64,000 nt of DNA, from NCBI RefSeq assembly GCF_006345805.1, contig NW_021833892.1, positions 1 through 64,000 on the forward strand. The letters run 5' to 3'. Shown piece by piece: positions 10,501-64,000 of this stretch. Positions within the stretch are counted from its first letter, which is position 1. Each line of letters begins with the position of its first letter. Below the pieces are notes generated by a model. It saw only the letters and a program-made list of their open reading frames with translations. It did no database searches and was not told the DNA's origin. Origin of the DNA: Octopus sinensis (taxonomy: Eukaryota). A program made the translations under genes and the position numbers.

Positions 10501-11720
10501 TGCTGGGCGGTATCACCTGTAGCCCACTCTGAAGGCTTAGCACGCTTCGGCATCCGAACTGACTCGGATGTTATTAGCGGCTCAGCCGACTTTGTCGGCA
10601 AAGGTGGTACCGACTCGCTCGCAATGTGGCTTGCAGGCTTCACAGGCCTCGCCACCGAAGCAGTCTTGGGTGGTTTGGACTGCTTTGCCCGCTTGCCAGG
10701 TTGTGGCCCAGTAACTGCGACGCTAGCCGCGCGACTTACCTTCGAGATTACACCCGCACCTACCTTTCGGGTTGCCTCCTTGAACTTGGGGCAACCTTTG
10801 AAGTTGGCACTGTGTCCCAACTTACCGCAGTTGACACAGTACCTCTTCGTAGGTGGCGAGGGGCATGCCTTGCGACCATGCTCGCCACCGCAGGTCAAGC
10901 ACTTCGCCTTCTCAGGACATCTCGTGCTTATGTGCCCGAAACCCTGACACCGAAAGCATTGGGTGGCTTTCGGGCGGGGCCGGACAGCACGAAGCCTAAC
11001 GTAGCCGACCCTCGTACCCAGCAGTATGAGGCGCTCGCTTCTTCCGCAGGAGATCCCAGCGTAACCTCCACCACTTCAAGAGGCCGATAACCTTGCTTGA
11101 AGCGTGCAATGGCAGAGGTACTGGGGTACTCCCGCTGCAGGTGCTCTAAAAGGTCGTTATCCTCAAAGTCCCGGGGGACCCCAAGGAGGAGGACTCTTAC
11201 CTGCCCTACCTTGCGTTCGAACCTGACAAGCCGATGCATGCCAGGACCGAACGGGATGGACTTTTCCAGCTCCCTTTCGAAACTGAAAAAGTCCTCAGAC
11301 TTCTCCCACCCAAGCAGGAATTGAGTGGGCTCCCTCTTCAGGACTCGATACCGCTTAGACGGCTGTATCGAGTCCAAGATCCCTAAAATTTTAACGACTG
11401 AGGCCTTTCCACAGTGGGAAAGACCTCTAGTCGTGCTACAAACGCCGAAGGTAATTCTAACCACCCCCGACGCGAGCAGTCTTCTTCGACGGCGGATCCA
11501 TCTCCGAAGACGAATTGCGAGAACCTAAGTTGTTAGAAATTGGACGGCAAGCGACACGTTTAGGTTTCCCAACGGTACGCCAGCCGTCCTCATGGGCTAC
11601 CTGAGCAGGTTCTACTGCATCCCCTTCTGTTCGGGATGGCTTTGCACCCCTTTTTTCTGCTTTAAGATTGCCATTTTTGCGCATCACAGGAAAAACGACC
11701 ATGCTTGCACGCTACAATTT
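7585..11720 (-). mobile_element. Near full-length Jockey/I-like LINE (ORF1 gag-like, ORF2 APE plus RT), frameshifted
   Basis: ORF1 starts at 11702 with zinc knuckles (CLTCGGEHGRKAC, CVNCGKLGHSANFKGCP) and stops at 10314; ORF2 ATG at 10293 with NIISVNARSL, GDLNAKH, SDHLP, LDIEKAFDSVWH, GVPQGSVLSP, YADD; AT-rich 3' end near 7585. Confidence 0.95.
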
Positions 11721-24555: not shown

Positions 24556-26261
24556 CAGTCGGACCTCGGTTTGAGCCATCAAGTGGCTCATAAACCGAGG
24601 TTGTATCATAAAACGAGGTTCGCTAATAATCCTAATTAACAGTACTTTAAGTACAAAATAGTTCACAAAAAACAGATAGAAACAGTTCATAAGTTATACT
24701 TTTTTGAAATAATGCGTAATCTTTTCTCCAAAACTATTTTTATCCCGTAAATTAATCATTATTTTTTTCCTTAGGGCGTAGAAATCATTTAATAATTCTG
24801 GAGAAAGTTTGCATATATTTTCCTCCATATTATTAATAAGAATCAGTGGATCTATGATGTCTGTTGATTCAGGCCCATTATAAAAATTTATTTCGCTTTC
24901 AAGCAATTCTTCGACAAAGACTTCGTTCACTATTTCTGTCACGTCTGTATGAATCTTTGAATTGATATTTATTGTTTCCTCCCATTTACACTCAAAAATT
25001 TTTTTCCAACAATTTTGAATTTGATTTGAAGTTACATTGGCCAGGCTTCAGAAATTAGTTGCATCACATTCCGTAAATTGAAACTTTTGATTGCTTCCAA
25101 AAAATTGCTTCTATTTTCACAAATGCATACGAATTCGATAAGTAAATTACTGTAATTTGTCTTGAGTGCTTTAATTATGCCCATATCCAATGGCTGAACT
25201 AACGATGTAGTGTTTTTAGGTAAATATAAAAATTCAATGTTTGAATAATCGGATAGTCTATGAGAACTAGCATTATCCAAAAACATTAATATTTTTCGGT
25301 TTTCAGAAAGCATTCTGGTATTTATTTAAAAACCCAGCTTTTAAAAATTTCAGTTGTCATCCACGAATTTTTAGAAGAAGAGTACATGACGTTAAAAACA
25401 TCAGGATTAAATTGTTTTAAGCACCGAGGGTTTCCATATTTGCCGATAATTAAAGGCTCCAGTTTCTCTCCAAGATAACTGCAGCATAGAAGCAGGCTAA
25501 TGACCATCGCGACTGAAGCGACCATCGACCCAATTTTCTTAATGGTCGGTCCAGATAAGGGAACTTTTTCAAGTCGCAATTTGTGAAAAATTTTGAAAAC
25601 TTTAAGATCGAGATTTTTAAGCTTTTCAGAATCACTAGTTTGCTCGGATAAATCAGAATAAATAGTTCCATTATCAAGAAAAGGGAAATCTTTTTTTATA
25701 CGTGAAATTGTAGCCCTGCTAACTATGAAAATTTCCGCAATTCTGCGCTCTGAAAGCTGGTTCCGTTTAATATATTGGGCTATTTCGAGTTTTTTTTCGT
25801 GATCAATTTTCATTTTAGGCATCTAGAAAACATAGAACAGTGGAAAATACTTCAACAAAGATAACAACGTGATAAGGAAAAAATTTCCGCAATTCTGCGC
25901 TCTGAAAGCTGGTTCCGTTTAATATATTGGGCTATTTCGAGTTTTTTTTCGTGATCAATTTTCATTTTAGGCATCTAGAAAACATAGAACAGTGGAAAAT
26001 ACTTCAACAAAGATAACAACGTGATAAGGAAAAAATTCTTTAAAATAAACGATAAAATATATAAAATAAAAATAATTATATTACAAAATATTTAGTTTAT
26101 AGCAATTTTTAGATGGCTCATAACGAGGTCTATTTTTAATTGATTTTTACAAACCCCTTAGGAAAAAAGCAGTTTCAAAAAACGTGGCTCAAAAATAGAG
26201 TTTGTATCATAAAGCGAGTATGGATCATACCCGAGGTCTGGCTCATAACGAGGTCCGACTG
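24556..26261 (-). mobile_element. pogo/Tigger-family DNA transposon with defective transposase
   Basis: TIR CAGTCGGACCTCG/CGAGGTCCGACTG with TA TSD; N-terminal HTH, FLDNASSH and QPLDMG present; first catalytic-D region deleted; 152-bp tandem duplication at 25729-26035. Confidence 0.95.
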
Positions 26262-27554: not shown

Positions 27555-28571
27555 TTAAGGAGATTTATTAGTAGTAATGTGGGACTTTGTATATCTACTC
27601 TCAGATTTCCAAGCAAGATTATAGCCAATTTTTGTGAGCAGGAGTTTGGACTGACTTAAAAATGAGCCACGGAATTTTCGACTACTAAGGCAAAGGACGT
27701 AGAACTTGAGGGCAAAGTGAGAGGAATAAACAGCATAGAAATAAATCATTTCGATTTGATGTAGGAGAATATATTTATTCCATTTGGCAACATAACTAGG
27801 CATATTTTGTATAGTACTGGGTTTGCTGCTGAATGTTGAGATTATAAATAGAATGGAATATGGCCATGCACACAAAACAAAGAATAATGATGTGACTATT
27901 AAACTGACGGTTAACCGACTTGATTTGTTAATACAATTAATTTTATTATAAAATATTATAAGAGAAATATTTATACTGATGACTACAAACGGAATCAATA
28001 ATACCATAAATATATGAACTATTCCCATATAATATTTCTCAATTTTTTCAAATCCCTCAATTTTTTTAGAAATACACAAATACCCGCCAACAGGCATTTT
28101 AAATGAGTGATAAAAAATCACGTATGGCACACATAGCATAAGCGACACCACAAGAACACACCCAAGTACAATTCCAGAGACTTTCGGGTTGCAATATTTA
28201 TTTCGTTTTAATGGATGTTTCAAAGATATATATAATTCACAAGTAAAGCACAAAATGAGCATTGGAGAGGCAAATTGAGCAAAGTAAAATCCGCCCACAT
28301 TTATTTTGCAAGCCACATTACTGGAGTCCAGAATATTGTGTTTCAACACGACTTTAGCTCGGAGGAGACAATTTGAGATTAAAAATAAAAGTTCGACAAA
28401 TCCGAGGGTGATCATAAAAAGGCCAGATGATGACTTTCTTAAATGTGTATTCCAAAATGTAATTATTAGACATAAATTGCCAGGGAGGCCGATTATTGAC
28501 CAAAAAATGAGGAAGAACCTTTCAACTTGGATTGTGTATTCTGGATATAGGTTGAACGAAGGGAAATTCAT
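27555..28571 (-). CDS. Intronless class A GPCR, 338 aa, peptide-receptor-like (GPR139/142 or FMRFaR-like pattern)
   Basis: Seven hydrophobic segments; TM1 GLPGN; TM3 Cys; ELY at the DRY position; TM6 CAWP. Confidence 0.9.
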   Translation of the reverse strand: MNFPSFNLYPEYTIQVERFFLIFWSIIGLPGNLCLIITFWNTHLRKSSSGLFMITLGFVELLFLISNCLLRAKVVLKHNILDSSNVACKINVGGFYFAQFASPMLILCFTCELYISLKHPLKRNKYCNPKVSGIVLGCVLVVSLMLCVPYVIFYHSFKMPVGGYLCISKKIEGFEKIEKYYMGIVHIFMVLLIPFVVISINISLIIFYNKINCINKSSRLTVSLIVTSLFFVLCAWPYSILFIISTFSSKPSTIQNMPSYVAKWNKYILLHQIEMIYFYAVYSSHFALKFYVLCLSSRKFRGSFLSQSKLLLTKIGYNLAWKSESRYTKSHITTNKSP

Positions 28572-38562: not shown

Positions 38563-38637
38563 TTCTCCATCCGGGATTCGAACCCGGATCAACGGTGTGA
38601 AAGACCGTCATCTTAAACCCCTAGAAAACGACAAAGA
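38563..38637 (-). tRNA. tRNA-Glu(TTC), possibly degenerate
   Basis: Anticodon arm ACGGT-CTTTCAC-ACCGT; T arm CCGGG-TTCGAAT-CCCGG; acceptor stem has three G-U pairs; downstream T-run. Confidence 0.8.
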
Positions 38638-48555: not shown

Positions 48556-48916
48556 ATATACAACTCCAAATACAATAATTTCATATAACCGCAATTTCGC
48601 TGGGAGGAATGATGCCAATCCTTTCATTTACAATTTTTTCAAATCTCGCCAGATTTTTACAATACCAGAGAAAGACTCGAGTCGATGAAATAGTCTCGAG
48701 TGAAAATTACACGCAATTTGAAAATATTTCAAAAATGAATAATAATTTGGGAATTTTTTTGTACATCGTATTTAATTAGTAACAGAGGATAAGATGGAAT
48801 CTTTCAAGTCGGTCATAATGATGTAATTAGGGTTAATTAAAATCTGATTTTGTTATTTTTAGAAATTGATTATTGTATAATTTAGTATAAATTTGAGTAA
48901 ACAGTCCTTTTATAAA

Positions 48917-49105
48917 ATGATTAGAGTATTAATAATATTATTTTATATATTTTTAACAATTTCCGATTACATCTCACCACCAAATCCCCCTGAAGAGTTT
49001 AACACAATGGAAGAAGTCATAAAATTCCTTAAAGAATATTACGACTACTTTGTCGTTATGATGCAACCAAGGTTAAAACTTATAAAATTTAGCTTCAGAT
49101 TTTAA
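48917..49105 (+). CDS. npf: Neuropeptide F / NPY-family precursor
   Basis: Signal peptide MIRVLIILFYIFLTIS; mature DYISPPNPPEEFNTMEEVIKFLKEYYDYFVVMMQPRF; phase-2 intron inside the Arg codon (49072-49098). Confidence 0.88.
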   Translation: MIRVLIILFYIFLTISDYISPPNPPEEFNTMEEVIKFLKEYYDYFVVMMQPRLKLIKFSFRF

Positions 49106-49244
49106 ACTCACAGTCAACAATTAATTCTCATCACTAACATAATTACTCATTTGATTTGCTAAAATAATTACAAAAGTGGCTTAATTATTCTCAGCTTACT
49201 CAAAGAAAAATTAGAAATCATATTTAAAGACCTACGAAGAAATG

Positions 49245-50866
49245 TTATTTTAAACTATTAGTATAAGGATTTAATGCAGGAGTCAATTCATTCGTAATAA
49301 ACTCGTCGATCTGTTGTGGTATACATCCGATATATTGCAAGGGATCTTTATAATCATCAACAAAAGGAAAATGCTGAGCAATATTCGATATTACATCACC
49401 TCCTTTCATTGAACACGCCCTAAGAATTGCATGACAGTCCTAAATATATTAAAAAATTAAAAAAAAAAACTTGTCTGTCTCCTCCCCTTCTGACAGCCTC
49501 CATAAGAACTTTTTCAGTGACCATAAAAGGAAGATGTTTGAGAAGATTAGAGGCTACCATCTACGACATATCTTTATATAAAACTTTTTGGTCGACTTGA
49601 ATACCACTGAAAACTCTTAGTAGTAGGTCAAGTACTCCATCGGCCAGTAGGAATGCCTCAGTCATCGTGATTCGTCTAATCATATAAGCAATAAATATGC
49701 CGATTTGCACTATCGTCAAGAGACCTCTCCAACCATTGAGTGGAGAGAGTCATCAGTGGATTGAGAGCCAGACTAATAAGGAGACGGGAAAGTGAACAAC
49801 ATCGTTCGCTCAAAATAGGATTACGTTTGTAGGGCATAGCACTGGAACCTATTTGTCAGTCACAAATAGATACCAATCTGTTCATCTCCAAATGGCTCCG
49901 ATAATTCTCTGTCGTGTGCCAGTAGTCGAATATCTGTACAAATCTTGTGGATGGATGCACCAAGACTTGCAAGGCCATTTAATATCATCACATCTTGCTT
50001 ACGACTATAGGTCTGACCAGTCACGACATATGCACTATTACTTACATAGAAATACAACCCGACAAAGTCAAATACACTGACTAGTTTTTCTTCCAATGAT
50101 TTGACCTTAATTATAGCGTAATTAAGAACTTTAAAAGTATCATCAAGTATTGACAAATAGCTGTCTTGAGACCCAGTTGCCCCCTTTAGTCCTTTAAGTC
50201 TTAGATTTGATCGAATGTCTGTCAGAGATTTCAAATCAGCCAGTAAATCTGCAGTCCACATGGCCGCTCGTTTTCCATACGTTGTCGCCTGTGCTGGTCT
50301 AGACATTAAGTAATCAAAAACTGATAATGAGTGTAGGCCAAAGCAACATTATTTCGATGTTTTTGAATAAATATTCTTAATGTGTCACAACAACGAGCAA
50401 TCTATATTTCTAAACTGCCAAAAATACTTTGACAAGTATCATGTCTAGTGCCTGTCTATAAATAATGATATCCTGCAATGTTAAGATTTGCTATGACTAC
50501 TGCATTGTCGGTTATATCACTCGAAGTTGCTCCCAAGTGAATTATTGGACGGGCAGATGGGCAGCATTGTCCATATGTCTTGACATGTGCCATCACATCA
50601 TGTGAGATTTCAGCCTCTATTCGACTAGCCAATTCAAAATCAATGTTATTCTGGTTTTTTGACAATTCTTCAACCTGTTCCTGACTGATTGGACATCCTA
50701 ATTCCTATTGACTTATTTATTAATACTATCTCACCATTTCCGCCTTGGCAAGTTCGGTCCAAATGATTCTCCATGTCCTTACCTTGTTTTGTTCACTAAG
50801 GAGACTCAGCATCTCCTTTGTGGCATATCGGGTCTCTATTGGACTGTGGTATATTTCCCTGTCCAT
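49245..50866 (-). CDS. ADSL: Adenylosuccinate lyase, multi-exon
   Basis: [10 protein letters not shown]; HDVMAHV; IHLGATS; AQATTYGKR; GLKGATG; [10 protein letters not shown]; 3' end approximate. Confidence 0.95.
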
Positions 50867-50959
50867 GCACAATCTCGATTAGTAATATTTTCTAAATCGT
50901 GACAAATTATATAATTCTATTAATTATAATCGATATAATTGTTGTTTAAAATAAAGTAC

Positions 50960-51600
50960 ATTTTCTTTAAAACGACATTTGCTGATTACTGTGTGTGTTT
51001 TAGACATTGTGCAAGAGAGGTACGTCGCCACCTCAACCAAAAATTGCCCCGGGAACCCACCACTACGCTCTAGAATCTACAACGCTTTTGTCAAACCGGT
51101 GCTATTGTACAACTCATCTACATGGGGCATCTCTGACACCGAACTAAAGAATCTTGACTCTTTTCACAGAAAACAGCTTCGCGTCCTAAATGGCCTGCAT
51201 TGCCTAAGAAAATCAACAACTCATCGCTCTACAAACTCAGTAACTCGGTGCCAGTCAGCCAGGACATCATAGATGGCCGCTGGAGGCTTTTCGGACACGT
51301 CCTGAGAATGGACCCGTCCTCACCTGCTTACCAAGCCATGGAAGAGTACTTTCTCTCGGATAGCCCAAAGTTTCGCGGACGTCCCCGCACAACACTGCCG
51401 GTTGCGCTGGAACACGATCTGAAACACGTGGGCAAAACCCTGAAAAATGCGAGGACTTGGACGAACTGCGATGGCTTGCACAAAACCGCAGAGGATGGCA
51501 AACGATGGTTAAGAAGATTGTATCGTGTGTGGCACGTGTGGGAATATAACTCTTTCCTTTCCTTGTTTATGTTCCTACGGGAAGTGCTAATAATAATTTG
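50960..51600 (+). mobile_element. RTE-like LINE 3' part
   Basis: RIYNAFVKPVLLYNSSTW; DGRWRLFGHVLRM; FRGRPRTT; short (TAA)n tail. Confidence 0.88.
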
Positions 51601-51679
51601 CTGATTGATTAAATTAGGACCCCAAAAAATAATCTAATCGTGTAGTATAAAATAATTAAAACAAAAGCCAAGGAGGATC

Positions 51680-52000
51680 CCCAAACAAGTGCGGTAAAGC
51701 GATCGTCTGGGACGCGACATGCTCTGACACATTTTTGTCATCATTTTTGTCATCAGCGGCCACGAAAGCGAAGGTACGAAAACCGAAAAATACGGATCCT
51801 TCTAGAACAGATTCATTTTCGAACCAGTGTCAGTCGAAACCTCAGACAGGCTAGGACCATCAACTCTTCGTTTCCTCTGAGAGAAGCCGCCACCTCGGAA
51901 GAATTAGAAACGAGCCCATAAGCACAATTGGCTTTTTGGGCGTGTCTCAATAGCTGTTCTTAGGAGGAACAGTTTCTGAATTCTCTCTGTGGGTAGTCTC
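51680..52000 (+). mobile_element. CRE-like RLE 3' fragment
   Basis: GKAIVWDATCSDT; FEPVSVETS.RLGP; RVSIAVLR. Confidence 0.75.
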
Positions 52001-52059
52001 TGATTGCTTTTTGTTTCTTTGTTTAATTATTATTATTCAAAGCACAGAGAATGTAAATT

Positions 52060-52600
52060 AACTAAGGTCCCGTTTGTGTCACACGTTTCACCAAGCTTCT
52101 CCATCGGTGTCTGTTTTTTGCGTCCCCTCTTCTAGGTCTTCCGCACATTTGAGTTTTTTCCCAATTTTATTGAGATCCTTGTTTAGAACAACAGGGAGAG
52201 TGATTCCAAGTCTTCCTTGTTTTCATTGTCAAAGTAATTGTCTATTGTAATGTTTGCGGGAGTGTTTATGTCAATTCTATGTACCTGCCCAAATAGCCTC
52301 CATCTTGATTCGGTAATTTCCGTGTTAATTGGAACCGAGTGTGTCATAGAGAACAATTTTTTGTTAGTATCTTATTTAGCCAATCTATGCCGAATAAATT
52401 GCATAAAAGCTTTCGATAAAATGTGTCAATTTTCTTGAGTTCTAATTCTGTGACTTCATATGTACCCAAGTTGCGAGTAATCGATTCTATTCCAAAAACA
52501 GAAACAGTGACAGAAATTTGTGACGTACGATACAACGAGACGGCTTGTCTAAACAGTCGAACTCTTCCGAGTTGTCACAAGTACCGGCTTTATATAGGAG
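52060..52600 (-). mobile_element. RTE-like LINE 3' fragment
   Basis: TYEVTELELKKIDTFYRKLL..LFGIDW. Confidence 0.6.
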
Positions 52601-53118
52601 TTATATAATCTTATTCGTAGCTTTGTTTTGATTTGCTTTGATCGACTCCATATTTTTTGCATTTTCTTATTCATTGCACTGATTAAGACTCTTTTATAAT
52701 CATGTCCCCACTATTACAAAGCAGGGATCCCAGTTTCTTTTTTTCACTCCAGTTTTCATAAATATGTTTTAATTCTCTTGTGATTCTTATGTGTTCGGTC
52801 TTTTCTTCATTAACATGCAGGGACCAATTCTTTGTCTAATATCTTTTTTATATAAAAAACTAATAAAATGCAGCATACTAAAATTATTCATCATTGCATA
52901 CATATTAGAAAAGTCGAAGAATGTCACAAATTTCTGAAAAATGTTTGAATCTATTTTTAATGGAAAAATCGTGGAAATTCTGGTCATATTTCTAAAATAA
53001 TGAGAGTGAAGAGACTGTAAAATTCTTTAAAATTTTACTTAATTCATCTAAGACAATTCAGAAGTATAGACAACAACAATCTTTTACTTATTTTTGCAAC
53101 AAAAACATATTTATTAAG

Positions 53119-53919
53119 TTATTTTATTCCAATTCGTTTCTGTTGAAGTTGGACCAAATATTGCTGATATTCAATCTCTTGTCCGTGAAGGAAATCCTTA
53201 TATTCTGTAGGATCGATGTGATCCACAACACTTATACCAACACTCAGAGCTTCCTTAACGACAGTTCTGCATATTGACTGGAGGGAATGGCCTCTCAGGA
53301 ATGGATCCTTAGCCTGTACGAGTGCAATTTCATACACGTGCTTTAATGTTATTTTTCCAGATAAAAAATTTTCTAATTTAAATTTAGTAATAAAATAATT
53401 ATTAAATATAATAATTTTTCCGGATAAAAAATGTTCTAATTTAAATTTAGTAATAAAATAATTATTAAATATAATAATTTTTCCGGATAAAAAATGTTCT
53501 AATTTAAATTGAGTAATAAAATAATTATTAAAGATATGCTCACGTGGTGCATCCGAATTAGGGTCCACTCCTGCCGCAAGTCTGACCAAAAAGACTATGG
53601 GAGGAGGATGAATAATAGTATTACAAGACCGATCAGCCTTCGAATAAAGCTTGACATTACATTTATAGAGATTGTGGTAGGAGTTGGGTAGCCGGCTTTG
53701 AGAGATTCTGTTTTTTCATTAAAATCCTTGCAAAACGCAGCAATTTGAATGTTTCTCTATAAATAGTTGTAAAACGACAACACATCCAAGGGCTGGGCCA
53801 AGAGGGGGTACTGGAGCGGCAGCGCCTGCAGGAATGTTGATAGTAAAAGGCTTGGTTTTATCGAATTTTAAATCTTTAAGTTGCTTCATTATTGTAAGCT
53901 TTTTTAGTTGTTTTGACAT
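53119..53919 (-). CDS. MRPL11: Mitochondrial ribosomal protein uL11m, multi-exon
   Basis: IPAGAAAPVPPLGPALG; FCKDFNEKT; GKITLKHVYEIA. Confidence 0.92.
53351..53536. repeat. 63-bp tandem triplication spanning an intron 3' end and exon start in MRPL11
   Basis: Units start at 53351, 53414 and 53477. Confidence 0.95.
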
Positions 53920-54029
53920 TTTGACCCACAAGTAAACTAGATCGCAATTTAAAATATTTATTAAAATTTACAATATCCATTTAAAAATAATAATTTAAAT
54001 TAATTAAGTTAATTGAATTTAAACCAATG

Positions 54030-54570
54030 GAAATTGTTAAAAGAATCTAGCTATTATGTACTGGCTCGCAGGATTGAAAGACAATTCCCGGATTCAAAAG
54101 CAAAAAGTGTACAGCCGTCTGGACGTTTTGCATCTTCAAGGACAAGGCCCGTCGGTCCCAGAATTGAAGGGAAACCAGCTTTTTTCAGAGCTTGGTGAAT
54201 TAGATTGTTAATTTCAGTGATTTAGATTGACAGATCCACAAATTAATCTTATTTTAAAAAAAGTGGAAAACGGAATAAGCTAGCTATTAAGTACCGGCTC
54301 GCATGATTGAGAGACAGTTTTGTCCCAATCCCGCTGAGAATTGACATCAGAAGGAGTTCAGAGAAAATTTGCTTCCAAAGTGTAAGGGCCGAATCAATAT
54401 CAGAGTCCAACGATGATTCAGTAGTTTTTTCCAGAATCTTTGGACAAGAAGATATGATCCAGACGCCGAAGAAAGAAAGGTAGGAAGGGCCAAATCAATA
54501 CTGGAACGGAGGCCCAGACCCCCATGACTCACAGGAAGTTTAGCTTGAACTTTTCCAATTTTTATCAAAA
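54030..54570 (-). mobile_element. CRE-like fragment with internal partial duplication
   Basis: QAKLPVSHGGLGLRS..LALPTFLSS; gctatta.gtac.ggctcgca.gattga.agaca occurs twice. Confidence 0.75.
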
Positions 54571-54850
54571 ATAAATTTTTATAGTATTTAATATTTTCTT
54601 TACTATTAATAAATATATATTATATTTAATAATTTTCTAATAAACTATATACACGATAGGATTCTTGTGGTACGTCAATATAAATATCTTAAATATATCT
54701 ATTTAATGCCATTGATTCATTATTAGGCCCCAAATGTCTAATAGCTACTACTGGCATAACATTAAAAGACTTAATTTAAAATAAAGTCTACATACTAACT
54801 ATATTTATTATATAATTAAATATATTTAAACACCCTATAAATAATAGAAA

Positions 54851-56230
54851 ATGAAAATATATGGAAGAATACCTCCAATTGGTCAGGATGGGTACATATT
54901 TGTATATATAAATAAAGTTATGTAAGCTTACTTCCCGAGGATTCCGAAGATATTTGGTCCCTTTATAACATTATGAATATCGGAGACGTTTTTCGATCAG
55001 ATGCTTTAAGGTAATTTATAAATAATCTTGTAATAACAGAAAAGTCGTGAACGAATCATCATCAGGGACCGTCACGACTTGTAAAGTGAAAACTCAGCTC
55101 ACAATTCGATCAGAAAAAATTGACGTTGATCTTAAAGAAGCAACAATTAGAGTAGAAGGGAAGAATGTATGTGAGAACAAATATGTAAAGGTCCTCTTTT
55201 ATATATTTATACTCAGATCGGAGCCTACCACACTTTAGAGTTGGGTATCGGCCGACAAGTCACGTTGGGGAAATCAGAATGGGACTCATACTGTGTTGAG
55301 AGATTAAGTCAGGCAGTCAACCAATGACCAATTCTGATCTCATGGCGATTATAATGCAGGAGGGAACTGCCTATGTTTGTCTGATTACAAAGTCTATGAC
55401 TATTGAGCGAGATAAGATTCAAGTCAATATTCCCAGGAAACGACCCAATTTTATGAGCGATTTTAATAAAGTTTGATTATTTGTCGGTAAATGACAGCAA
55501 GTGGATAAATTTCATCAACAGTTGCTTCGTTCTTTGCTTAAAAATGCGAATTTTGATGGTTTTATAAATATGTTTAGTAGTAGTGTTGAAATGCATTATT
55601 ATTGCATCCCCAGGATTTTATAGAGTATTTTTACTTATAAATTTGAAGGAGTCTTTTTATAAGTACATAATGGATGATAAAGTTCTTTTGGAAAATAAAG
55701 TTCTTGCACAAAATAAATCAAAATTTCTGCTTGTTCACTCTTCTTCTGGTTTTAAACATTCCCTCCAACGTTCTTGTTTGTGGAGTCATTTAATATAGAA
55801 ATATTGCCCAAGGTCATTTCTAAATTTGAAAACGTCCAAGTTGTTGATGAGATCAAAGAGTTGAATCGCTTCATGAAACTTCTCGAGAACGATTCTGAAC
55901 GAGCCATTTATGGGTTTTTGATTTGTCGCATTTTAGACCTAAACATGTCTTAAAGGCACGTGATTTGATGGCTGTAGATACGCTATTGATAACTGATGAG
56001 TTGTTGAGGTTCTGGATTTTCTGTTATTGAGAAGAGATGAGGACGTGTGTGTTCGGAGGACGTACAGAGGTCTTGTCGAGGACATACGGCGAGGAAATGG
56101 ACGCGTCAAGATCCTTTCGTGTCAGCATTCTTCTGGAAAACGTGGAATTTATTTCATTGTTGTAGAAGTCTCCATGATGACTGGTGTATGTGCTATTCTC
56201 AGATTTCCAGTTGAGGCCGACGAAGATTAG
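54851..56230 (+). CDS. PELO: Pelota/Dom34 ribosome rescue factor, multi-exon
   Basis: LLPEDSEDIWSLYNI; R|KVVNESSSG; ENKYVK|IGAYHTLEL; IIIASPGF; HSSSGFKHSL; LRFP. Confidence 0.95.
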
Positions 56231-56638
56231 TTGATTACTCTATTTTTAATATTTGACTGTCTTTGCTATTTTATAAAAATGATGTGTAAAAACCTGTCAC
56301 TTTTCAAATCATACACATGATTTTTACTGTCATAAATTTTAATAATTTTGCGGCATTTCATTAATTTAATATTTTAATAATCCAAGATGGTTTATAGGAT
56401 TTGTATTCTTTATGAATGATCTTTATTTGGGTTTCTGTGGCAATCATGGGAGCACAGAGCTAAGAATAAGCCATATTTTTGAAAAGATGGCCTTCCTACA
56501 ATTTTTCAATCTTCGGTGTTTACTCTGGGCTTAATAAAATGCTGTGAAATTTTTTATATTGTTTACAAATTAATTAAAAAGTTAGTCAAAAATCGATAAA
56601 TTAGTTGTGTTAATGGTTTAACTAGACTTTGAGTATTA

Positions 56639-57556
56639 TTAAGGTTTTTTCACTCTGCATACAAGCTTGTGTAATTCTTGAGGATTTGCAAATTCCCATT
56701 TTCCACATGCATTCATCGTAGCACAGGTTCCTTTACTGTTCCTATATTCATTTGCCCAATTTTGATATTTCTAAAATTTGAATTTTGTTCACAAACTTGG
56801 TTTTTAGGTGGAATTTGTATCCAAATCATATTGTTGTAGGAATTGACAAACAATTCTGTAAAATAATCGCAAATAATAAAGCTACGATTTAAGTTCTTAT
56901 TGATTGTAAAATTTTCAGGAATGACTGGCTCTCCTTTGATTTTTTCACATACGGTCTTCATCATGTTGCAGGGTACTTTCTGATAATATTCAAAGTAGCA
57001 ATAAACGTCGTCACAATGAAGACGGGTATCTATTAGTTAAACAATAAGTTCAATTTGACTTGGTATAGTGCACAACAAGCCTCTTTCCTCATTACAGCAT
57101 AGTGTCTGCCATTTCCCACACTCGTCCAACTCTGCACACATATTACAGCTGTAACTAAAAGGCTGATGATTTCCCCAATTTATGTAACGCTAAAATTTGG
57201 TTCAAAAATAAAAAACCAATGGTAAATTGTAATATCCATTCCAACTATTATTTTTCTTAATGTGTTCCAAACCAATCCAAAAGTTTTTTTCGTGTTCCTC
57301 TGACAAGTCTAAAAGGTATATTTAGATAAATTAGTTTGACCTCTCACAAAGTTATTTTCTGCTTCAGAATTGATTAAAATCAGTTTCAATCCGAATGTAT
57401 CACATATAGTTTTTCCTGTTGATATATCATATTCAGAATCAGTATGTATATAATATATTTCATTTTTTGTGTTATGAACCATTTCGTTCATTACTAGTAT
57501 TGTCCTAATTAAAACAGTATACCTAGTAGTGGTGATATAAGGAATAAAGAAAGCAT
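56639..57556 (-). CDS. Secreted protein with two divergent C-type-lectin-like modules, multi-exon
   Basis: Signal-like MLSLFLISPLLV; ICDTFGLKLILINSEAENNFV; second module MKTVCEKIKGEPV...CGKWEF..LVCR. Confidence 0.5.
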
Positions 57557-57969
57557 TTTGTAATAATTATTATCGACTGTATATATCCTAATTTAAATTG
57601 TTGCCTCGACCAGATGTTGTATCAAGATCAAAGAGAGCACATATGATGCATCATTTAAGTGGAACTAAATTTTATGGTGCAAGTGAGAAAATGTGTTGTT
57701 ATAAATCCACTTAAATCTTTAACAACAAATAAAAATATTAACTAGAATTTTATTTTGGTTTATCGTAATTATAAACCAAATTGTCTTTTTGTTGCTTATT
57801 TCCAAAATTTCAATGACGGAAACTACAAAATTCAAGGATACATTTTTAATTCTAAAAAAACATACATAGAATAATTAAGTTAATATTATTTTATTGTCCT
57901 CTAGAGGTTAATCTTTTTCTTTTAGAGGAGAAAGTAACCAACACCACTCCTTGATCCTCTATCTTCAAG

Positions 57970-58700
57970 TTAGTTACGACTCTTTTTCTTCATTCGCCAT
58001 ATTATCTTCATACGAATGACTTGCTTCAATTAAGAGGCTATTAGCTGAATTTATCTCCTCATCAGTGATTCTGATCCCCTGCTTGTGCTCAACAATCATA
58101 CTCTCCAGTGTTTTCTTCAACACAAATGACTGTATATAAGACTGAGTTCCGTCTTCGATAGCCAACTTTTTAATGTAGTTCTTAAAAAACTTGAATTATT
58201 TCACTTGAGCGTCATAAAGAATTGACAACTCTCCTGCCAATAGATCGTATTTATGGGATTTCTCGACCTGCTTCAGGCGGTCCTTGAAAGTGATTTCCAC
58301 TTGAATAAGAGTAATTTCGTCCTTAATTTTGGCGTACAAAAATTTTTCAGGCTTGTTATACTGAATATTCGTGTCTGTGATTATTTGAGAATCGACTCGT
58401 ATTTCGACATTTTATTAACGCCAGACGCTTACTCTTCGTCGTCTAACTTTATTCCATGTCTGTGTTCAATGAACATACTTCAGCGTCTCCTTTAACACAA
58501 CCGTTCTTTCTTAGATTAATAACATTCATATGACTTTTAAAGAGTTTAGAGACAACGCTATCCCATGTCAAGACAATTGGAATAATCTTTACTTTTAGAT
58601 GCCCGACAATTCGTTTGCGAGCAGGTCGTATTTGTGAAATTGTTCCACTTCATCTTGCTTTAAGCGGTCCTGTGAGGTAATGTCCGATTAAAGTTAGTTC
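57970..58700 (-). mobile_element. Two tandem R4/Dong- or R2-like RLE C-terminal relics
   Basis: NKPE.FLY.K..DEITLIQV.IT..DRLKQVE..HKYDLLA; KIIPIVLTWD; YIQSFVLKKTLESM. Confidence 0.75.
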
Positions 58701-59339
58701 TATTTGTGTCATTTTGTAAACAAAAAATGTCAGGTTTATTGAACTAGATTGTCGTTACTGTCAGAATTGACGTGTCAACTCTGATTTCGACATTATTGAC
58801 ACAACGGAGTGTCCTTTCAACTTCCTGCTTTTTTTAATTCCATAAATTCGACACAAATAAAATACACTTTACACTTCATTATGTCGAAATGAATGACAAT
58901 TCGAATAAAATAGTAATCCGCATTTTTCCGTCTTAGGGAAAAACAAAGTCCCAGAAATGACCTAGTTTCACATTAAGGAAGTTTTAGTTAGTCAAGTTCA
59001 GTAAAATTACAAAGACAGTTTCTTTTACAATTTGAACTTCACTTGCCTCAGATGCCTTGAAGTTCCGCTAAATAATTTCTCAGTCAAAGTTATCAAATAG
59101 ACCGGTACTTGTTGGAGTTCCGTTTCCTAACACAAATATCCTCAGCTTTTGAAATTCGGAACTCAATCAGCAAAATCTGAAAAATTGCCAAAAATCAACT
59201 TATTACCCAATTTAGAAATAATATATTAAAAAAATAAACATCATTTTAACAAAAATTAATAAAACCAATGATTTAAATTAATTTACTAATTATAAAATGA
59301 GATGACTATATTTAAATATATTCTCTTTCGTCATTGCTA

Positions 59340-62300
59340 GACAATCTATGCATGCATCATCACTAGTCTCATTGATCCGCCAGTTACACCAACCCTGTAC
59401 CACCGAGGCCTCACTCCTCCGTATAGTCCAGCCATAACTAATAGAGGACAAACTACACTCATTTGAACTAAACGACGACTGTGGAGTCACATGTCTCAAC
59501 ATTATCCAACATAGCCACGAGGAATTCGTCCAAATCTCAGCTCTTTCAATCATTCAGGTGTCATTAGTCTTATTAGCAAAGAAATACATAAAAAGGAAAT
59601 GTCTTCTGCCTTCAAACCAACAGGACATATCACTCATATTCCAGTCCATTTGGGAAATGGCCCTTTCCATCCCTAAACCAGTGGTAAACCGAAAACTATG
59701 CCACACAGTCGTATTTATAGCTCAATATGAGCCCAATAATGTCATCAATCAAATTCTTGAGGTTTTCTCGATCAATTTTATCATTTTAGCTGCTTTCCTG
59801 TAAGGAAACTGTCCTTGTTGGGTCAAGAATGATGCTCAGTCTTTCTGAACTGTTTTTATACCCATCAGGAGTTCTTCACAAAACGAGTCAAGCGTTACAA
59901 AATTTGCTAAACAATTCAATTCCCGTGATATTTCACGTGTCAACAAGTTGGCAATAAATAAAATGTGTGTTTTTAGATGTGCTTGATAATATTTTTAATT
60001 TATGTGTCAAAGAAGGATCTGAAACGTCAAGCTTTCAAAATTTTGGACACGAAAAATGTGGGGATATTTGGAATATTGTGTGCTCTAATTTACTGAATTC
60101 GATGATAAAAATGATTCATATTTCGATAACTGAATCTCTGAGGACTCACATGTTGAGTGTTATATTCAATATAGCTGCACTTGAAGGGATTTCTTTTAAA
60201 TGTTGTGTGATATTGGCTATTTGTTTAGACGGATTTAATGATTCTGGAGAATTATCTTTGCTTAGTCTACGTGCTATTAATGAATTATAAACCAAAAGCC
60301 GATTTCTGACAAACATGACGCGATTATTTCTGAAATATTAAACCATTCTTTCGTCATGTTACAACACCACCTCGCAAAAGTGCCTGCTAACGGTTCAAAT
60401 GTATTTATAAGAAATAATACTTATGAAATTAAGTTTATTATTATTAATTTATTAATTTAGTTATTTTAAAGAATTGGTTGATTTTTTAAAAATTTTGGTC
60501 GACAAACACCTTATTCGATTTAACAGTTTTACGATAACTAAATGGATGGAAATTTTAAAACTGTTCACATTTTGTCATGTTTATATATTTTTAATCGTTA
60601 AATAATAGGAGGATGAAACCCACCTGATCGAGTGTTTTCGAATTTGGGAAAAATTACTGGACTACATTGACCAATCAAAGCCAGATTTTATTCAAAAAAA
60701 TCAAAATTTAGCTTTTAAAGATCTTACATGTAAGTTGGCACTACAGTCAGTCGAACTGATGTGCTCAGTCGTACAAATAAGCCAGACAGAGCAACAAGAT
60801 TACGTTGAAGAAGTTTTTATTATCCTTCCATGATTTTTCAGACTGATTTGGCCCATGTGACGCTTTCTATTATCAATAAAGTCGTCAGTTTATATCCAAT
60901 GGAAATCCTCGGCCATTTGGTTGCTATTTTTATGTTCAAATTGAATTAGTTTGAGTTCAATCAACAAAATTTGAAACGTTTTTTCGATTCTTTGCCAAAT
61001 AACGGTTTTTTTCAGGTTTAATATGTTTTAGTGACTCCGACTTTAATCAAACAAAATATCATTTCCCTCACTATTGTAAGTTCCCTTGTCCCGTTTCTTG
61101 TCTCGTTTTTTGAGGAATACCAGGAATTGTCGAGGAATTGTTTCGAAAGGTTTTTAACGATTATTAAGTTGTCAGTATTGTCAAATTTGGAGGAATTCTT
61201 CTGAACTATTCCTACGACCAACTGTTTGTTAATCGTTTAATCCTAGTCTAATCCACGTGTTTGAGTGCTGTCAAATGTTTTGCCTTTGGTTGAAACAAGT
61301 CCAGAGAGCCTGTGGCTGGGAATCATTTCCTTTCATGTTGATTTGTCCTCTAAATTTGATATTTGCTGCATTTACTGATATGAATTTGGTATTTTTTGTT
61401 TTTGGGATTTTAGAGTAATCACGTGCTGAAATCTGCTGCCTTGATGTTTGGGAAATACGTCCAATTGGTGCGTCCCCCGTTGCTTTTTTCTCATGAAAAT
61501 TTGATGGGATCGTTCAGAGGATTTGTCTCCCAACTGAGTAGTTTATCTACAAGGACAAAACTGACAGGAAAAGTTGTATTTTTGTTGGTTTTTGTAAAGA
61601 TTGTTGTTGAAATTTGTGTTGCTTATTCAAATTATTTGATTCTTCCTTGGAGTGTTCCAAACGAAAGATTTCAAAATTGGGACGTCCGAAAATCCGAACA
61701 TTTGTATTTCGTAAAAACATTAATTGCTGATTTAAGTTGATAAAATATCTTATTTTTAGTGAAAAATGATTTTTTGTTATGTCTGGAGTGCTGTACTGGA
61801 TTCATATCTGCACTACATTACGACGGTTGTGCCAAAAGTAGAAATATTTGCATGGACTCGCTGCAGGATTTTATAGACGGAAGTGTTCATTTTCTCAATT
61901 CAAACACACTCTTGAGAGGTTGAGTGTCTGTGTCTTTAAATTAGGTGGACTAACTCAGAGGTATTTCGAGTTTATAACTTCGGTCATGATTTGCTTCAAG
62001 AAAAATATATCTATTAATATTGTCAAGAATATATTGATAGTATATTGGGGAAAGGTGACTTTTAGATTTTTTGTGAGTGTTTTTGCCCGCTAATTGAGGG
62101 CAACGATTATAAATCTGAATATATCTGTTATTTGATTGAAAATCCGTCCACGTTTGATGGGTTGGACGTAGAAAGTTAATTTTAGACTTTTGCAGCTGAT
62201 TTCAGTGGCCTTTGAACATGTGAATACTTCTGTCTTTGACATGGTAGAACAATTCCTTGGAATATTGCTAAATAAACGTTTTTATACTTTTTCAAAAGTT

Positions 62301-63030
62301 TGTTGTTGTTTCGCTCAAAGACTCAAGGATGTGTCTTCTGTGAGTGGACTACGCGCTATTTTTGATGTCTTTGAATCCATTTTGAAGTTTCAGTGGCAAT
62401 TTTTTTATTTAAAGTCCTGCCAAGGGGAATTCCGTACTGAATCGGTTCAAACATTGTTTATTCTCATTTTCCGAGTATTATTATATTTTGTAAATCTTAG
62501 GCCTATGAGTCCTCGTTTTTGGAACCTGATATTGAACTTTGTCAGCGAAATGTTATATTTTTAAGAGATTTTATCAACAAAAACAAAATTTTTGAATTTG
62601 TATTTTATTGTCTTAGAAAATGCTTAGAAATGCCTTAGAGATCAGTTTTTTGTGTCGTTGAGCGAAAGTTGTCTTTTTTTGATGAAATCTGCAAATTATT
62701 CTATCATTGGTGAAGACGTGATATCGTTTTTGTTTGAAATTGCGTCTTTTGACTGGTTCCTATTCAACGAACGAGTTATGGAGGGATACGTCGACTTTAT
62801 GAGGAGACAATTTACCTCAGCATTGTGTTGTCCTGTGGTTGATTTGGTTTGGAGTCCTTCTTGTAAAGTTAATTCTTGATTATGCGATATAATAGGACTT
62901 TTCTTCGTTTTCAAAGACTATTGGTGAATTGTCCTCGGATATTTGTTTATATGAAGATCTGCTGTCGTCGCACAAGCTATGAATTTGTCGTTTTATAAAT
63001 TGGATATTTTTATGTCAATCTTTAATTCTT
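59340..63030 (+). CDS. Large multi-exon hydrophobic helical protein, HEAT-repeat/MROH-like; identity and ends uncertain
   Basis: Chain of plus-strand ORFs from 59558 to 62879 separated by micro-intron-like gaps; Leu/Phe-rich helical composition. Confidence 0.45.
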
Positions 63031-63399
63031 TATTAAATAAACTAATTAATCAACTTTACAAAACATGAGTGGCTTTTACTAAACGTGAAAATATTTTTTT
63101 AACACTTTTACTAAACTGTTTAATTGAGTACTGAGCGTTCGATGTAAACAAAGAAAGTTCTTCTTGCCTCTCATCTTTTTTTCTGGCTCTGCAAACTTTC
63201 AAGAAAGTGTAGTCGAGCGTCTGTTGCTGACTTAATGATGATCGAACGAGATGTCTTTAGAGTTGTTTTAAGAACATTAACCTTATCTAACTGCTAAAGT
63301 AATTCTCTTGGTATTATTAGTGATTAATCTTTCAATTTCATTACACTCCTTTCGAGGAGATTTTAATCTAGGCACATTTCCAGTTAGAGATTTTACTCG

Positions 63400-64000
63400 A
63401 TTTTGAAACAATTTGATAATTGTGTTGCTCGATTTGTCGGAAACGAAAATGTCGGGCTTACTATTAGGGAAATTTCTTAACTGGCCGACGCGGAAGGGTC
63501 CGTATTGACAATACTACTTCAAGATCAAGACTACTTCCCAATGGTGTCCCACAAGGCTCCCCTTTATCTCCTCTCCTTTTTAACATTACCTACCTATTAC
63601 TAATGACCCAGATATTATGTTCTTATCCTATGCGGACGACCTGATTATTGCTGCAAGAGATAAATCTCCTTCTGTGGCTGTTGCAATAGTCCAGTCACAC
63701 CTCAATTGTGTATGTGATTGGCTATCTGCAAACATGTTGTGTGTGTCTGCATCTAAATCCCAGTTCACATTTTTTTACTACTGATAGAAGATTCAAGGAT
63801 AGACTGGAACTATTCATTGGAGACAAACCTATTCCCTCTTCGAGTACCTAGAAGATCCTTGGCGTAGTTTTCGACTCCTTAATGACGTTCTCAAGTCACG
63901 TGGAGGAGGTTCTAGCTAAAGGTCTTTGGAAGTGGAACGTCTTGAAAGCGCGGTTAAAAAAGAGTCCCTTCCCCCTGGAAGATTGTGTCAGGAAAGTCTA
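63400..64000 (+). mobile_element. LINE reverse transcriptase relic, runs off the window
   Basis: GVPQGSPLSPLLFNI; YADDLII; KILGVVFD. Confidence 0.88.

What the first reader, a model, noticed from the sequence alone, without database searches (positions are those of the whole stretch)
48917..49105. NPF/NPY precursor ends at Arg-Phe-stop with no amidation signal
Seen: signal peptide plus a 37-aa peptide with the PPxxPEEF start, Phe at -17, Tyr at -10 and an intron inside the penultimate Arg codon; splicing 49072-49098 gives ...MMQPRF followed directly by TAA. Established: NPF/NPY precursors continue with Gly-Lys-Arg and a C-terminal peptide, and the amide is normally needed for receptor activity. 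Inference: a free-acid, convertase-independent NPF, implying loss of or escape from the PHM/PAL amidation pathway and a co-adapted receptor. The Arg-to-Gln change in RPRF fits such divergence. This is the best candidate for an undescribed system in the window.
Basis: partly seen in the sequence, partly recalled or inferred. Interest (0 to 1): 0.85.

Follow-up and report, generated by a model that had tools for sequence, protein, structure and literature searches.

The report
Dicyemid neuropeptide F gene without amidation signal
A tiny gene in what is almost certainly a dicyemid parasite contig hidden in an octopus genome assembly encodes a clear relative of the hormone neuropeptide F/Y, but stops right after the last residue, so the peptide cannot receive the C-terminal amide that all known family members carry.

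Summary
ATG 48917, exon 1 to 49071, a 27-nt GT..AG intron (49072-49098) and 'A TTT TAA' give a 53-aa product: a 16-aa signal peptide plus a 37-aa peptide ending QPRF-stop.

It is a real NPF/NPY homologue:
- A profile of six published molluscan NPFs matches it gaplessly end to end (E 2e-8). The next best of 1516 window ORFs has E 2.
- Pfam Hormone_3 is its only hit (E 4e-4, below the gathering score).
- The intron splits the Arg codon between bases 2 and 3, as is diagnostic for the family.
- An AlphaFold model resembles PP/NPY.

The window is bases 1-64000 of an unplaced contig of the Octopus sinensis assembly. Its genes have 22-32-nt introns, so it is most likely a dicyemid, an animal without neurons.

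No Gly can be recovered. No R-F/Y-G acceptor lies in the next 15 kb, and no single-base edit, alternative acceptor (gives QPSFRF-stop), intron retention or recoding supplies one. Among 88 NPF precursors surveyed, none ends at RF-stop.

Expression, conservation in other dicyemids, and the presence of PHM/PAL could not be tested. A working free-acid hormone and a recently truncated relic both remain open.

The parts
48917..48964 (+). Start codon and predicted signal peptide MIRVLIILFYIFLTIS (16 aa)
   Evidence: Translation. The n-region is MIR, the 12-residue hydrophobic core has GRAVY 3.1, and T at -3 and S at -1 fit the signal-peptidase rule. The NPF profile alignment begins at the next residue, as in molluscan precursors, where the peptide follows the signal peptide directly. 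No signal-peptide predictor was available.
48965..49071 (+). Codons for residues 1-35 of the 37-aa NPF-like peptide (DYISPPNPPEEFNTMEEVIKFLKEYYDYFVVMMQP) plus the first two bases (AG) of the Arg-36 codon
   Evidence: Gapless match to profile positions 3-38 of a molluscan NPF profile. Pfam Hormone_3 aligns residues 20-53 to profile positions 2-35 of 36. Seven columns are invariant with six molluscan NPFs: P, P, P, F, Y, R, F. The AF2 model has pLDDT 86 with a helix at residues 15-33.
49072..49098 (+). Putative 27-nt phase-2 intron, GTTAAAACTTATAAAATTTAGCTTCAG
   Evidence: GT..AG. It lies between the 2nd and 3rd base of the Arg codon of the terminal RF, the position conserved in NPY/NPF genes (PMC7314547; PMC2953531). 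Its length fits the 22-32 nt of 22 confident introns in the window and the 27-bp median published for dicyemids (PMC6543705). Splicing raises the NPF profile score from 26.5 to 30.9 bits. Weak point: the splice-motif score is low (3.2), and no transcript evidence is available.
49091..49092 (+). Alternative acceptor AG (TTTAG) inside the intron. It would make a 21-nt intron and the product ...MMQPSFRF-stop
   Evidence: Splice matrix score 10.7 against 3.2 for the 27-nt form, but it is shorter than all 22 confident introns. The NPF profile score is lower, 26.3 bits.
49099..49102 (+). Terminal coding bases: the third base of Arg-36 (A) and the Phe-37 codon (TTT)
49103..49105 (+). TAA stop codon directly after Phe. 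It sits where all other family members have Gly followed by a basic cleavage site and a C-terminal peptide
   Evidence: No single-base substitution, insertion or deletion in the first 15 nt of exon 2 yields RFG or RYG. TAA also ends the neighbouring adenylosuccinate lyase ORF (...TNSLK), whose homologue alignments run to within three bases of that stop.

Best explanation
This is a genuine but highly divergent neuropeptide F/Y-family gene. It belongs to a dicyemid mesozoan whose DNA was co-assembled with its host, Octopus sinensis.

The gene has been pared down to the minimum: a 16-aa signal peptide and a 37-aa PP-fold peptide. The family's diagnostic intron in the penultimate Arg codon is shrunk to 27 nt, and a stop codon follows the final Phe directly. 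The Gly amide donor, the basic cleavage site and the C-terminal flanking peptide are all gone.

The only product the DNA can encode is therefore a peptide with a free C-terminal carboxylate. Signal peptidase alone would release it, with no need for a prohormone convertase, carboxypeptidase E or the amidating enzymes.

Shown here: homology, intron position, the RF-stop ending and its robustness.

Inferred: that the gene is transcribed and spliced as drawn, and that the acidic peptide (pI 4.3) is secreted and still signals. The target could be one of the few dicyemid GPCRs or possibly a host receptor.

My estimates:
- NPF homologue: about 0.9.
- No Gly-encoding exon exists: about 0.85.
- Still a functional secreted peptide: about 0.45.
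For: Homology:
- The molluscan-NPF profile hit is unique in the window, gapless and end to end (E 1.9e-8).
- Pfam Hormone_3 is the sole hit (E 3.9e-4).
- Identity to NPFs is 32-38% in the alignment, up to 15/37.
- The AF2 model's best structural neighbours are PP, NPY, PYY, avian PP and miniproteins that, from my own knowledge, are built on the avian PP scaffold.

Gene structure:
- The intron lies between bases 2 and 3 of the Arg codon, as in the family.
- The chance frequency of such a splice pattern is about 1e-4 per position.

Organism:
- The contig is VCDQ01003741.1 of GCA_006345805.1, the Octopus sinensis assembly.
- Window introns are 22-32 nt, mean 26, against a dicyemid median of 27 bp.
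- D. japonicum lives in O. sinensis.
- The neighbouring ADSL is at most 48% identical to anything in the database.

No Gly:
-.
- 0 of 88 surveyed family members end RF-stop.

Signs of retained constraint:
- The 74-codon stop-free frame (48881-49102) sits in about 32% GC DNA; from that composition I expect roughly one stop per 13 codons.
- The signal peptide, splice sites, the PP-fold residues and the terminal PRF are all intact.
Against: - There is no transcript, peptide or orthologue evidence. No dicyemid relative was reachable in any collection.
- The splice-motif score of the 27-nt intron is no better than background.
- Pfam's score (20.8 bits) is below the gathering score (28.7).
- The receptor-binding end has diverged. 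GRPRF has become MQPRF, the Arg at -4 is lost, and the net charge is -4 against +0.4 to +1.5 in two molluscan NPFs. Together with the missing amide, this is what relaxed constraint would also produce.
- Codon usage is uninformative.
- Dicyemids are reported to have no neurons and only two rhodopsin-type GPCRs. The one in this window looks most like somatostatin, galanin or chemokine receptors, not NPY receptors.
Confidence: 0.5

Rival explanations
1. Recently disabled relic. The dicyemid inherited a canonical NPF gene. A nonsense change at the Gly codon (for example GGA to TGA, then TAA) cut off the amidation and cleavage signal, and the rest of the gene has not yet decayed. Any peptide made has no signalling role.
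For: - The two most conserved receptor-contact features are gone: the amide donor, and the Arg at -4 together with the Gly at -5.
- The peptide has become strongly acidic.
- Dicyemids lack a nervous system and have lost most GPCRs.
- No CPON-like remnant is readable downstream in any frame.
- Codon usage gives no sign of coding constraint.
Against: - The reading frame, start codon, signal peptide, both splice sites, the fold-defining Pro/Phe/Tyr residues and the terminal PRF are all intact, in a fast-evolving AT-rich genome where I expect stops about every 13 codons.
- The downstream peptide has decayed beyond recognition while the upstream part has not. This suggests the truncation is old and the rest has been maintained since.
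Confidence: 0.33
2. The precursor is canonical but mis-read. A further exon, an alternative splice or a recoding event supplies Gly and a cleavage site.
For: - Some dicyemid introns are longer than 30 nt (mean 38 bp in D. japonicum).
- The motif score of the 27-nt intron is weak.
Against: - No acceptor followed by [A/G]+Phe/Tyr+Gly exists anywhere in 49072-64000.
- The alternative acceptors give SFRF-stop or a non-NPF tail.
- Reading the letters by hand, readthrough of the TAA and a +1 shift give ...RF-X-THSQQ... and ...RFKLTVNN, and the TTTAAAC heptamer is not in the register a -1 slip would need; none supplies Gly. The frames themselves are shown.
- The convergent adenylosuccinate lyase gene ends only about 140 nt downstream.
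Confidence: 0.07
3. Assembly or sequencing error in a low-coverage contaminant contig of a PacBio assembly created the stop.
For: The assembly is PacBio-based, and the site lies in T4/A3 homopolymers.
Against: - None of 120 single-base edits around the site gives RFG or RYG. At least two substitutions are needed.
- Long exons of neighbouring genes are uninterrupted: 363-aa aconitase and 338-aa GPCR ORFs.
Confidence: 0.03
4. Chance ORF in intergenic AT-rich DNA that merely resembles NPF.
For: - The ORF is short.
- The Pfam score is below the gathering threshold.
- No hit appeared in the 1.84-billion-protein search with exon 1 alone.
Against: - Profile E 1.9e-8, against E 2 for the next best of 1516 ORFs.
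- The match is gapless and ends exactly at the signal-peptide cleavage site and at the stop.
- The family-specific intron position is met.
- The structural neighbours are PP-fold peptides.
Confidence: 0.02

Closest known systems
Lophotrochozoan neuropeptide F (molluscan and annelid NPF, e.g. Lymnaea, Aplysia, Idiosepius, Lottia, Crassostrea)
   Same: - A signal peptide is followed directly by a 36-40-aa peptide.
- It has the PPxRPxEF-type N-terminus (here PPNPPEEF), an amphipathic helix, an aromatic residue at -17, Tyr at -10 and a terminal PRF.
- The alignment is gapless with 32-38% identity.
- The intron splits the penultimate Arg codon after its second base.
   Different: - All surveyed precursors continue RF-G-(KR | RS..KR) plus a 20-30-aa C-terminal peptide. 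This one stops after RF.
- GRPRF is replaced by MQPRF.
- The peptide is acidic (pI 4.3) instead of neutral to basic (pI 8.0-9.4 in the two computed).
- The signal peptide is 16 aa rather than about 21.
- The intron is 27 nt.
Flatworm NPF/NPY genes (Moniezia, Schistosoma, and the planarian npy-1 to npy-11 family)
   Same: - They are spiralian parasites or relatives with the same intron position (PMC2953531).
- Tyr/Phe at -10 and -17 and a terminal RF.
- The planarian family shows that the C-terminus can vary: npy-11 lacks the aromatic residue.
   Different: - Described flatworm precursors keep the amidation Gly and the dibasic site (P0160, Schmidtea NPY-1, RF-GKR).
- From my own knowledge, flatworm peptides mostly lack the PPxxPEEF N-terminus that this peptide shares with molluscs.
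Vertebrate NPY / PYY / pancreatic polypeptide (Pfam PF00159 Hormone_3)
   Same: - 36-37 residues with a PP-fold. The model superposes on receptor-bound PP and NPY with TM 0.76-0.80.
- Tyr at -10 and an aromatic residue at -17.
- The intron lies in the Arg-35 codon.
   Different: - The sequence match is sub-threshold (20.8 bits against 28.7).
- The C-terminus is QPRF-COOH rather than RQRY-NH2.
- There is no GKR and no CPON.

Membership tests
NPY/NPF neuropeptide family (homology) | Significant sequence similarity over the whole mature peptide | tested here: met
   The profile of six published molluscan NPFs gives E 1.9e-8 and 30.9 bits, gapless over profile positions 3-39 of 39, and the hit is unique among 1516 window ORFs. 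Pfam PF00159 is the only hit, E 3.9e-4.
NPY/NPF neuropeptide family (homology) | Score at or above Pfam's curated gathering threshold for Hormone_3 | tested here: not met
   20.8 bits against a cut-off of 28.7. Even with an artificial GKR appended it reaches only 24.8 bits.
NPY/NPF neuropeptide family (homology) | Intron between the 2nd and 3rd nucleotide of the Arg codon of the C-terminal RF/RY | tested here: met
   ...CCA AG|GT..(27 nt)..AG|A TTT. The rule is stated in PMC7314547 and PMC2953531. This depends on the 27-nt splice being the one used, and no transcript evidence is available.
NPY/NPF neuropeptide family (homology) | Signal peptide immediately followed by a 36-40-residue peptide with N-terminal prolines and a PP-fold | tested here: met
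   16-aa hydrophobic leader plus a 37-aa peptide. P21, P22 and P25 are invariant with molluscan NPFs. The AF2 model has pLDDT 86 and a helix at 15-33. Foldseek's top hits are PP-fold peptides, though their E-values are not significant for so short a chain.
NPY/NPF neuropeptide family (homology) | Aromatic residues at -10 and -17 from the C-terminus | tested here: met
   Tyr44 is at -10 and Phe37 at -17. Tyr at -10 is invariant in the alignment.
Canonical amidated NPF/NPY prohormone (function) | C-terminal R-x-R-F/Y motif | tested here: not met
   The ending is Q-P-R-F. The Arg at -4 is replaced by Gln and the Gly at -5 by Met.
Canonical amidated NPF/NPY prohormone (function) | Gly amide donor followed by a basic cleavage site and a C-terminal flanking peptide | tested here: not met
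   TAA follows Phe directly. No Gly can be obtained by another exon, acceptor, single-base edit or recoding. All comparison precursors that continue past RF have Gly, apart from one with Glu.
Canonical amidated NPF/NPY prohormone (function) | Expressed, processed peptide that activates an NPY/NPF-type GPCR | not testable with these tools
   No dicyemid transcriptome, peptidome or receptor assay was reachable. The GPCR in the window (27558-28571, minus strand) is 7tm_1 but is nearest to chemokine, somatostatin and galanin receptors.
Dicyemid (Dicyemida) nuclear genome | Spliceosomal introns miniaturised to about 27 bp in a compact, AT-rich bilaterian genome associated with a cephalopod host | tested here: met
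   22 confident introns measure 22-32 nt, mean 26, against a published median of 27 bp. GC is about 30-35%. The contig comes from the Octopus sinensis assembly, and this octopus hosts D. japonicum. No direct comparison with a named dicyemid sequence was possible.

The most novel reading that the evidence does not exclude
An animal with no neurons, and reportedly only two rhodopsin-type GPCRs, has kept an NPF/NPY hormone. It has re-engineered it into a one-step secreted peptide: signal peptidase only, with no convertase, no carboxypeptidase and no amidation. The free-acid, acidic form is the active ligand, either for a co-evolved dicyemid receptor or for the octopus host's NPF receptor in the renal sac. 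This would be the first naturally non-amidated, functional member of the NPY/NPF family.
Probability: 0.25. Interest if true: 0.8.

Novelty: new variant of a known kind. Interest (0 to 1): 0.6.

Why it matters
From established pharmacology (my own knowledge), C-terminal amidation is treated as indispensable for NPY/NPF receptor activation. Here, every comparison precursor that continues past RF carried Gly, apart from one with Glu. A maintained family member that cannot be amidated would test that rule.

If it is functional, it would show how a peptide hormone system is stripped down in an extremely reduced parasite. It would also give a handle on cell-to-cell or parasite-to-host signalling in dicyemids. 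No neuropeptide gene is described for dicyemids in the literature I could search; only antibody staining is reported.

If it is a relic, it dates the dismantling of peptidergic signalling in an animal that lost its nervous system.

In either case it flags that the Octopus sinensis reference assembly contains long dicyemid contigs.

Tried and rejected
1. A word-indexed protein search with the 53-aa precursor found no candidate, not even a called ORF of the window itself.
2. An exhaustive phmmer search of the exon-1 product against 1.84 billion representatives gave 0 hits at E<=0.001.
3. I tried to reach orthologous loci through the neighbouring adenylosuccinate lyase. Nothing is more than 48% identical. 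The best ENA hit is an unrelated metagenome scaffold. No other dicyemid genome is therefore in the collections.
4. A search for a Gly-bearing exon, AG[AG](TTY|TAY)GGN in 49072-64000, found none.
5. Single-base error scan: no RFG or RYG. Readthrough, a +1 shift and -1 slippage at TTTAAAC, which is out of register, do not give Gly. These three were read by hand from the letters; the frames are shown.
6. The codon-usage log-likelihood was uninformative. The candidate scores 0.079 per codon, against a control-ORF median of 0.071.
7. The splice-site matrix does not favour the 27-nt intron. I kept this as a caveat.
8. Is the window's GPCR an NPF receptor? Its best PDB matches are CCR9, muscarinic, somatostatin, MCH and galanin receptors, and no NPY receptor appears in the 60 shown. 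I rejected it as evidence.
9. Host-derived gene transfer: identity to a cephalopod-type NPF (P0086) is only 13/36, lower than to gastropod NPFs at 15/37. Rejected.
10. Rfam, tRNA and repeat scans of the locus found nothing relevant.
11. Literature on dicyemid neuropeptides, PAM or convertases: only immunostaining is reported, and no gene-level data. McVeigh et al. 2009 was not held.

Full report
**What is in the sequence**

The ATG is at 48917. Exon 1 runs 155 nt and ends ...ATG ATG CAA CCA AG. It is followed by GTTAAAACTTATAAAATTTAGCTTCAG (49072-49098, 27 nt) and then A TTT TAA (49099-49105).

This is a 16-aa hydrophobic leader (core GRAVY 3.1, T at -3 and S at -1) followed by a 37-aa peptide. 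PPNPPEEF, Phe at -17 and Tyr at -10 are as described.

**Whose genome this is**

The adenylosuccinate lyase ORF 800 nt downstream is carried by NCBI contig VCDQ01003741.1 (421 kb) of GCA_006345805.1. The locus coordinates show that the window is bases 1-64000 of that contig. That assembly is the PacBio/Hi-C genome of Octopus sinensis.

The window does not look like an octopus:
- GC is about 30-35%.
- Genes are densely packed: a cyclic-nucleotide-gated-type channel, a GPCR, an SMC protein, aconitase, an RRM protein, adenylosuccinate lyase and a ribosomal L11-domain protein. I recognised aconitase and SMC from the ORF translations only.
- 22 confidently placed introns, each flanked by at least 50 open codons on both sides, measure 22-32 nt with a mean of 26.
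- The lyase fragment is at most 48% identical to anything in 5.8 billion protein clusters.

Introns with a median of 27 bp are the published hallmark of dicyemid mesozoans (PMC6543705). Dicyema japonicum was itself collected from O. sinensis (PMC6736024). The contig is therefore most likely dicyemid DNA co-assembled with the host. I could not compare it with a named dicyemid sequence, because none is in the reachable collections.

**Is it really an NPF/NPY gene?**

- Pfam gives one hit only, PF00159 Hormone_3. E is 3.9e-4 and the score 20.8 bits (gathering score 28.7), with residues 20-53 aligned to profile positions 2-35 of 36. The unspliced reading scores 18.1 bits.
- I built a profile from the six molluscan NPFs printed in Table 5 of PMC4208409 and searched all 1516 stop-to-stop ORFs of at least 25 aa in the six frames of the window. 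The spliced product scores 30.9 bits (E 1.9e-8), gapless over profile positions 3-39 of 39. The alignment starts at the predicted signal-peptidase site and ends at the stop. The unspliced ORF scores 26.5 bits, and the next best ORF has E 2.
- Seven columns are invariant between the candidate and the six NPFs: P, P, P, F, Y, R, F.
- A single-sequence AlphaFold model of residues 17-52 has mean pLDDT 86, an extended N-terminus and a helix at residues 15-33.
- Foldseek E-values are not significant for so short a chain. Even so, most of the 12 matches are PP-fold peptides: receptor-bound PP (TM 0.76), NPY (TM 0.80), avian PP, PYY/NPY crystals and several designed miniproteins, which from my own knowledge are built on the avian PP scaffold.

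**The intron**

NPY/NPF genes from chordates to nematodes share an intron between the second and third base of the Arg codon of the terminal RF/RY (PMC7314547; PMC2953531). Here the donor falls exactly there (CCA AG|GT), and the acceptor restores A TTT.

The pattern AG|GT-(18-33 nt)-AG|[AG]+Phe/Tyr occurs at only 13 of 128,000 positions in the window. Finding it at the one homologous position is therefore very unlikely by chance. It is the only instance followed by a stop, and none is followed by Gly. The 27-nt length matches the dicyemid median.

There is one caveat. A position matrix from the 22 confident introns scores this intron at 3.2, which is at the bottom of the true-intron range (3.0-13.2) and about the background median. 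An internal TTTAG acceptor (AG at 49091-49092) scores 10.7. That alternative makes a 21-nt intron, shorter than any confident intron here, and gives ...QPSFRF-stop, which lowers the NPF profile score to 26.3 bits. Retention is also in frame and gives ...QPRLKLIKFSFRF-stop. Only transcripts can decide between these. All three readings end Arg-Phe-stop.

**Is the missing Gly real?**

- No acceptor followed by [A/G]+Phe/Tyr+Gly exists anywhere in the 15 kb downstream.
- The convergent lyase gene ends at 49245, about 140 nt away.
- None of 120 single-base substitutions, insertions or deletions around the site gives RFG or RYG.
- Reading the letters by hand, TAA readthrough, a +1 shift and -1 slippage do not supply Gly either (frames shown).
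- TAA also ends the neighbouring lyase ORF, and homologue alignments run to within three bases of that stop.

As a yardstick, I surveyed 88 NPF-family proteins found with the alignment. Every precursor that continues past RF reads RF-G-KR or RF-G-RS...KR, except one JGI sequence with RF-EKR. Many ORF-called fragments stop at ...GRPR, which is at the conserved intron. None ends RF-stop.

**How it most likely works**

Shown here: a divergent NPF homologue whose precursor is reduced to a signal peptide plus the peptide.

Inferred: if it is expressed, signal peptidase alone would release a 37-residue PP-fold peptide with a free carboxylate. No convertase, carboxypeptidase or PHM/PAL step would be needed.

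The peptide is unusual in other ways. GRPRF has become MQPRF, and the net charge is -4 (pI 4.3), against +0.4 and +1.5 for the two molluscan NPFs I computed.

Several features argue that selection has kept the peptide, and that the truncation is not very recent:
- The frame is intact over 74 stop-free codons, in DNA where I expect a stop about every 13 codons.
- The leader and both splice sites are intact.
- The fold-defining Pro/Phe/Tyr residues and the terminal PRF are retained.
- The former C-terminal peptide has disappeared completely.

The loss of both hallmark receptor contacts, in an animal without neurons and with reportedly only two rhodopsin-type GPCRs (PMC6543705), argues equally well for a dying gene. 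I put a functional free-acid peptide at about 0.45 and a relic at about 0.33. A hidden exon, an assembly error and a chance ORF together come to about 0.12.

**What is not supported**

Nothing here shows loss of the amidation pathway or a co-adapted receptor.
- The window contains no PHM, PAL, PC2 or CPE gene, and the papers I could read say nothing about them in dicyemids.
- The window does carry a rhodopsin-family GPCR 20 kb away (27558-28571, minus strand; 7tm_1, E 8e-19). Its nearest solved relatives are chemokine, muscarinic, somatostatin, MCH and galanin receptors, not NPY receptors.
- There is no sign that the gene was taken from the host. Identity to a cephalopod-type NPF is 13/36, lower than to gastropod NPFs.

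**Novelty and verdict**

In the literature I could search, dicyemid 'neuropeptides' are known only from antibody staining (PMC6854800). No neuropeptide gene is described.

I class the locus as a new variant of a known kind. It is an NPF/NPY-family gene by descent that fails the family's functional definition: no amide donor, no cleavage site and no RxRF motif. Its interest is moderate to high and depends on expression and conservation data, which exist publicly but were out of reach here.

Noticed in passing
window 1-64000 (= VCDQ01003741.1:1-64000 of GCA_006345805.1): The whole window looks like parasite (dicyemid-type) DNA inside the Octopus sinensis reference assembly. It has 22-32-nt introns, about 32% GC and dense genes. 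The contig is 421 kb, so the contamination is substantial.
   Followed up: partly
window ~7950-11500, both strands: A GC-rich (about 50%) block sits in an otherwise 30-35% GC contig. It holds frameshifted ORFs of a non-LTR retrotransposon, with RVT_1 at E 4e-28 for 8081-8683 (minus strand). Whether it is a dicyemid LINE, a host-derived element or a chimeric join was not examined.
   Followed up: partly
window 27558-28571 (-): Single-exon rhodopsin-family GPCR (338 aa, 7tm_1 E 8e-19, ELY in place of DRY, CAWP in TM6). Dicyema sp. is reported to have only two such receptors, so this is probably one of a very small set. Its nearest solved structures are CCR9, muscarinic, somatostatin, galanin and MCH receptors.
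   Followed up: partly
window 25325-25822 (-): ORF with an HTH plus the start of a DDE_1 endonuclease domain (a pogo/Tigger-like transposase fragment), next to the GPCR gene.
   Followed up: no
window 53351-53536: A 63-nt unit is repeated 3.0 times at 96% identity inside the ORF that carries a Ribosomal_L11 domain (53119-53589, minus strand). It encodes three copies of ...IIIFNNYFITKFKLEHFLSGK... It could be an in-frame coding expansion or intronic. This is unresolved.
   Followed up: no
protein P0119 (JGI, 93 aa): An Aplysia-like NPF precursor reads ...GRPRF-EKR, with Glu where every other full precursor has the amidation Gly. It could be a sequencing error or a second natural case of a non-amidatable NPF.
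   Followed up: no
window 48609-48779 (+): A 56-aa ATG ORF lies 140 nt upstream of the NPF-like gene on the same strand. It has a hydrophobic N-terminus (MMPILSFTIFSNLARFL) and an RKTR motif. There are no homologues or domain hits to judge it by.
   Followed up: no
window 14150-15731 (-): Exons of an ion channel with Ion_trans and cNMP_binding domains (CNG/HCN-type), joined by 23-25-nt introns. This is a sensory-type channel in an animal without neurons.
   Followed up: no
window 51200-51604 (+): An ORF resembling the C-terminal tail of a retrotransposon ORF2 (...RWRLFGHVLRM...RGRPR...) in a locally GC-richer stretch just upstream of the adenylosuccinate lyase gene. It has no Pfam hit.
   Followed up: no
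window 38563-38637 (-): A single tRNA-Glu(TTC) gene. It is the only Rfam or ARAGORN hit in the window.
   Followed up: yes
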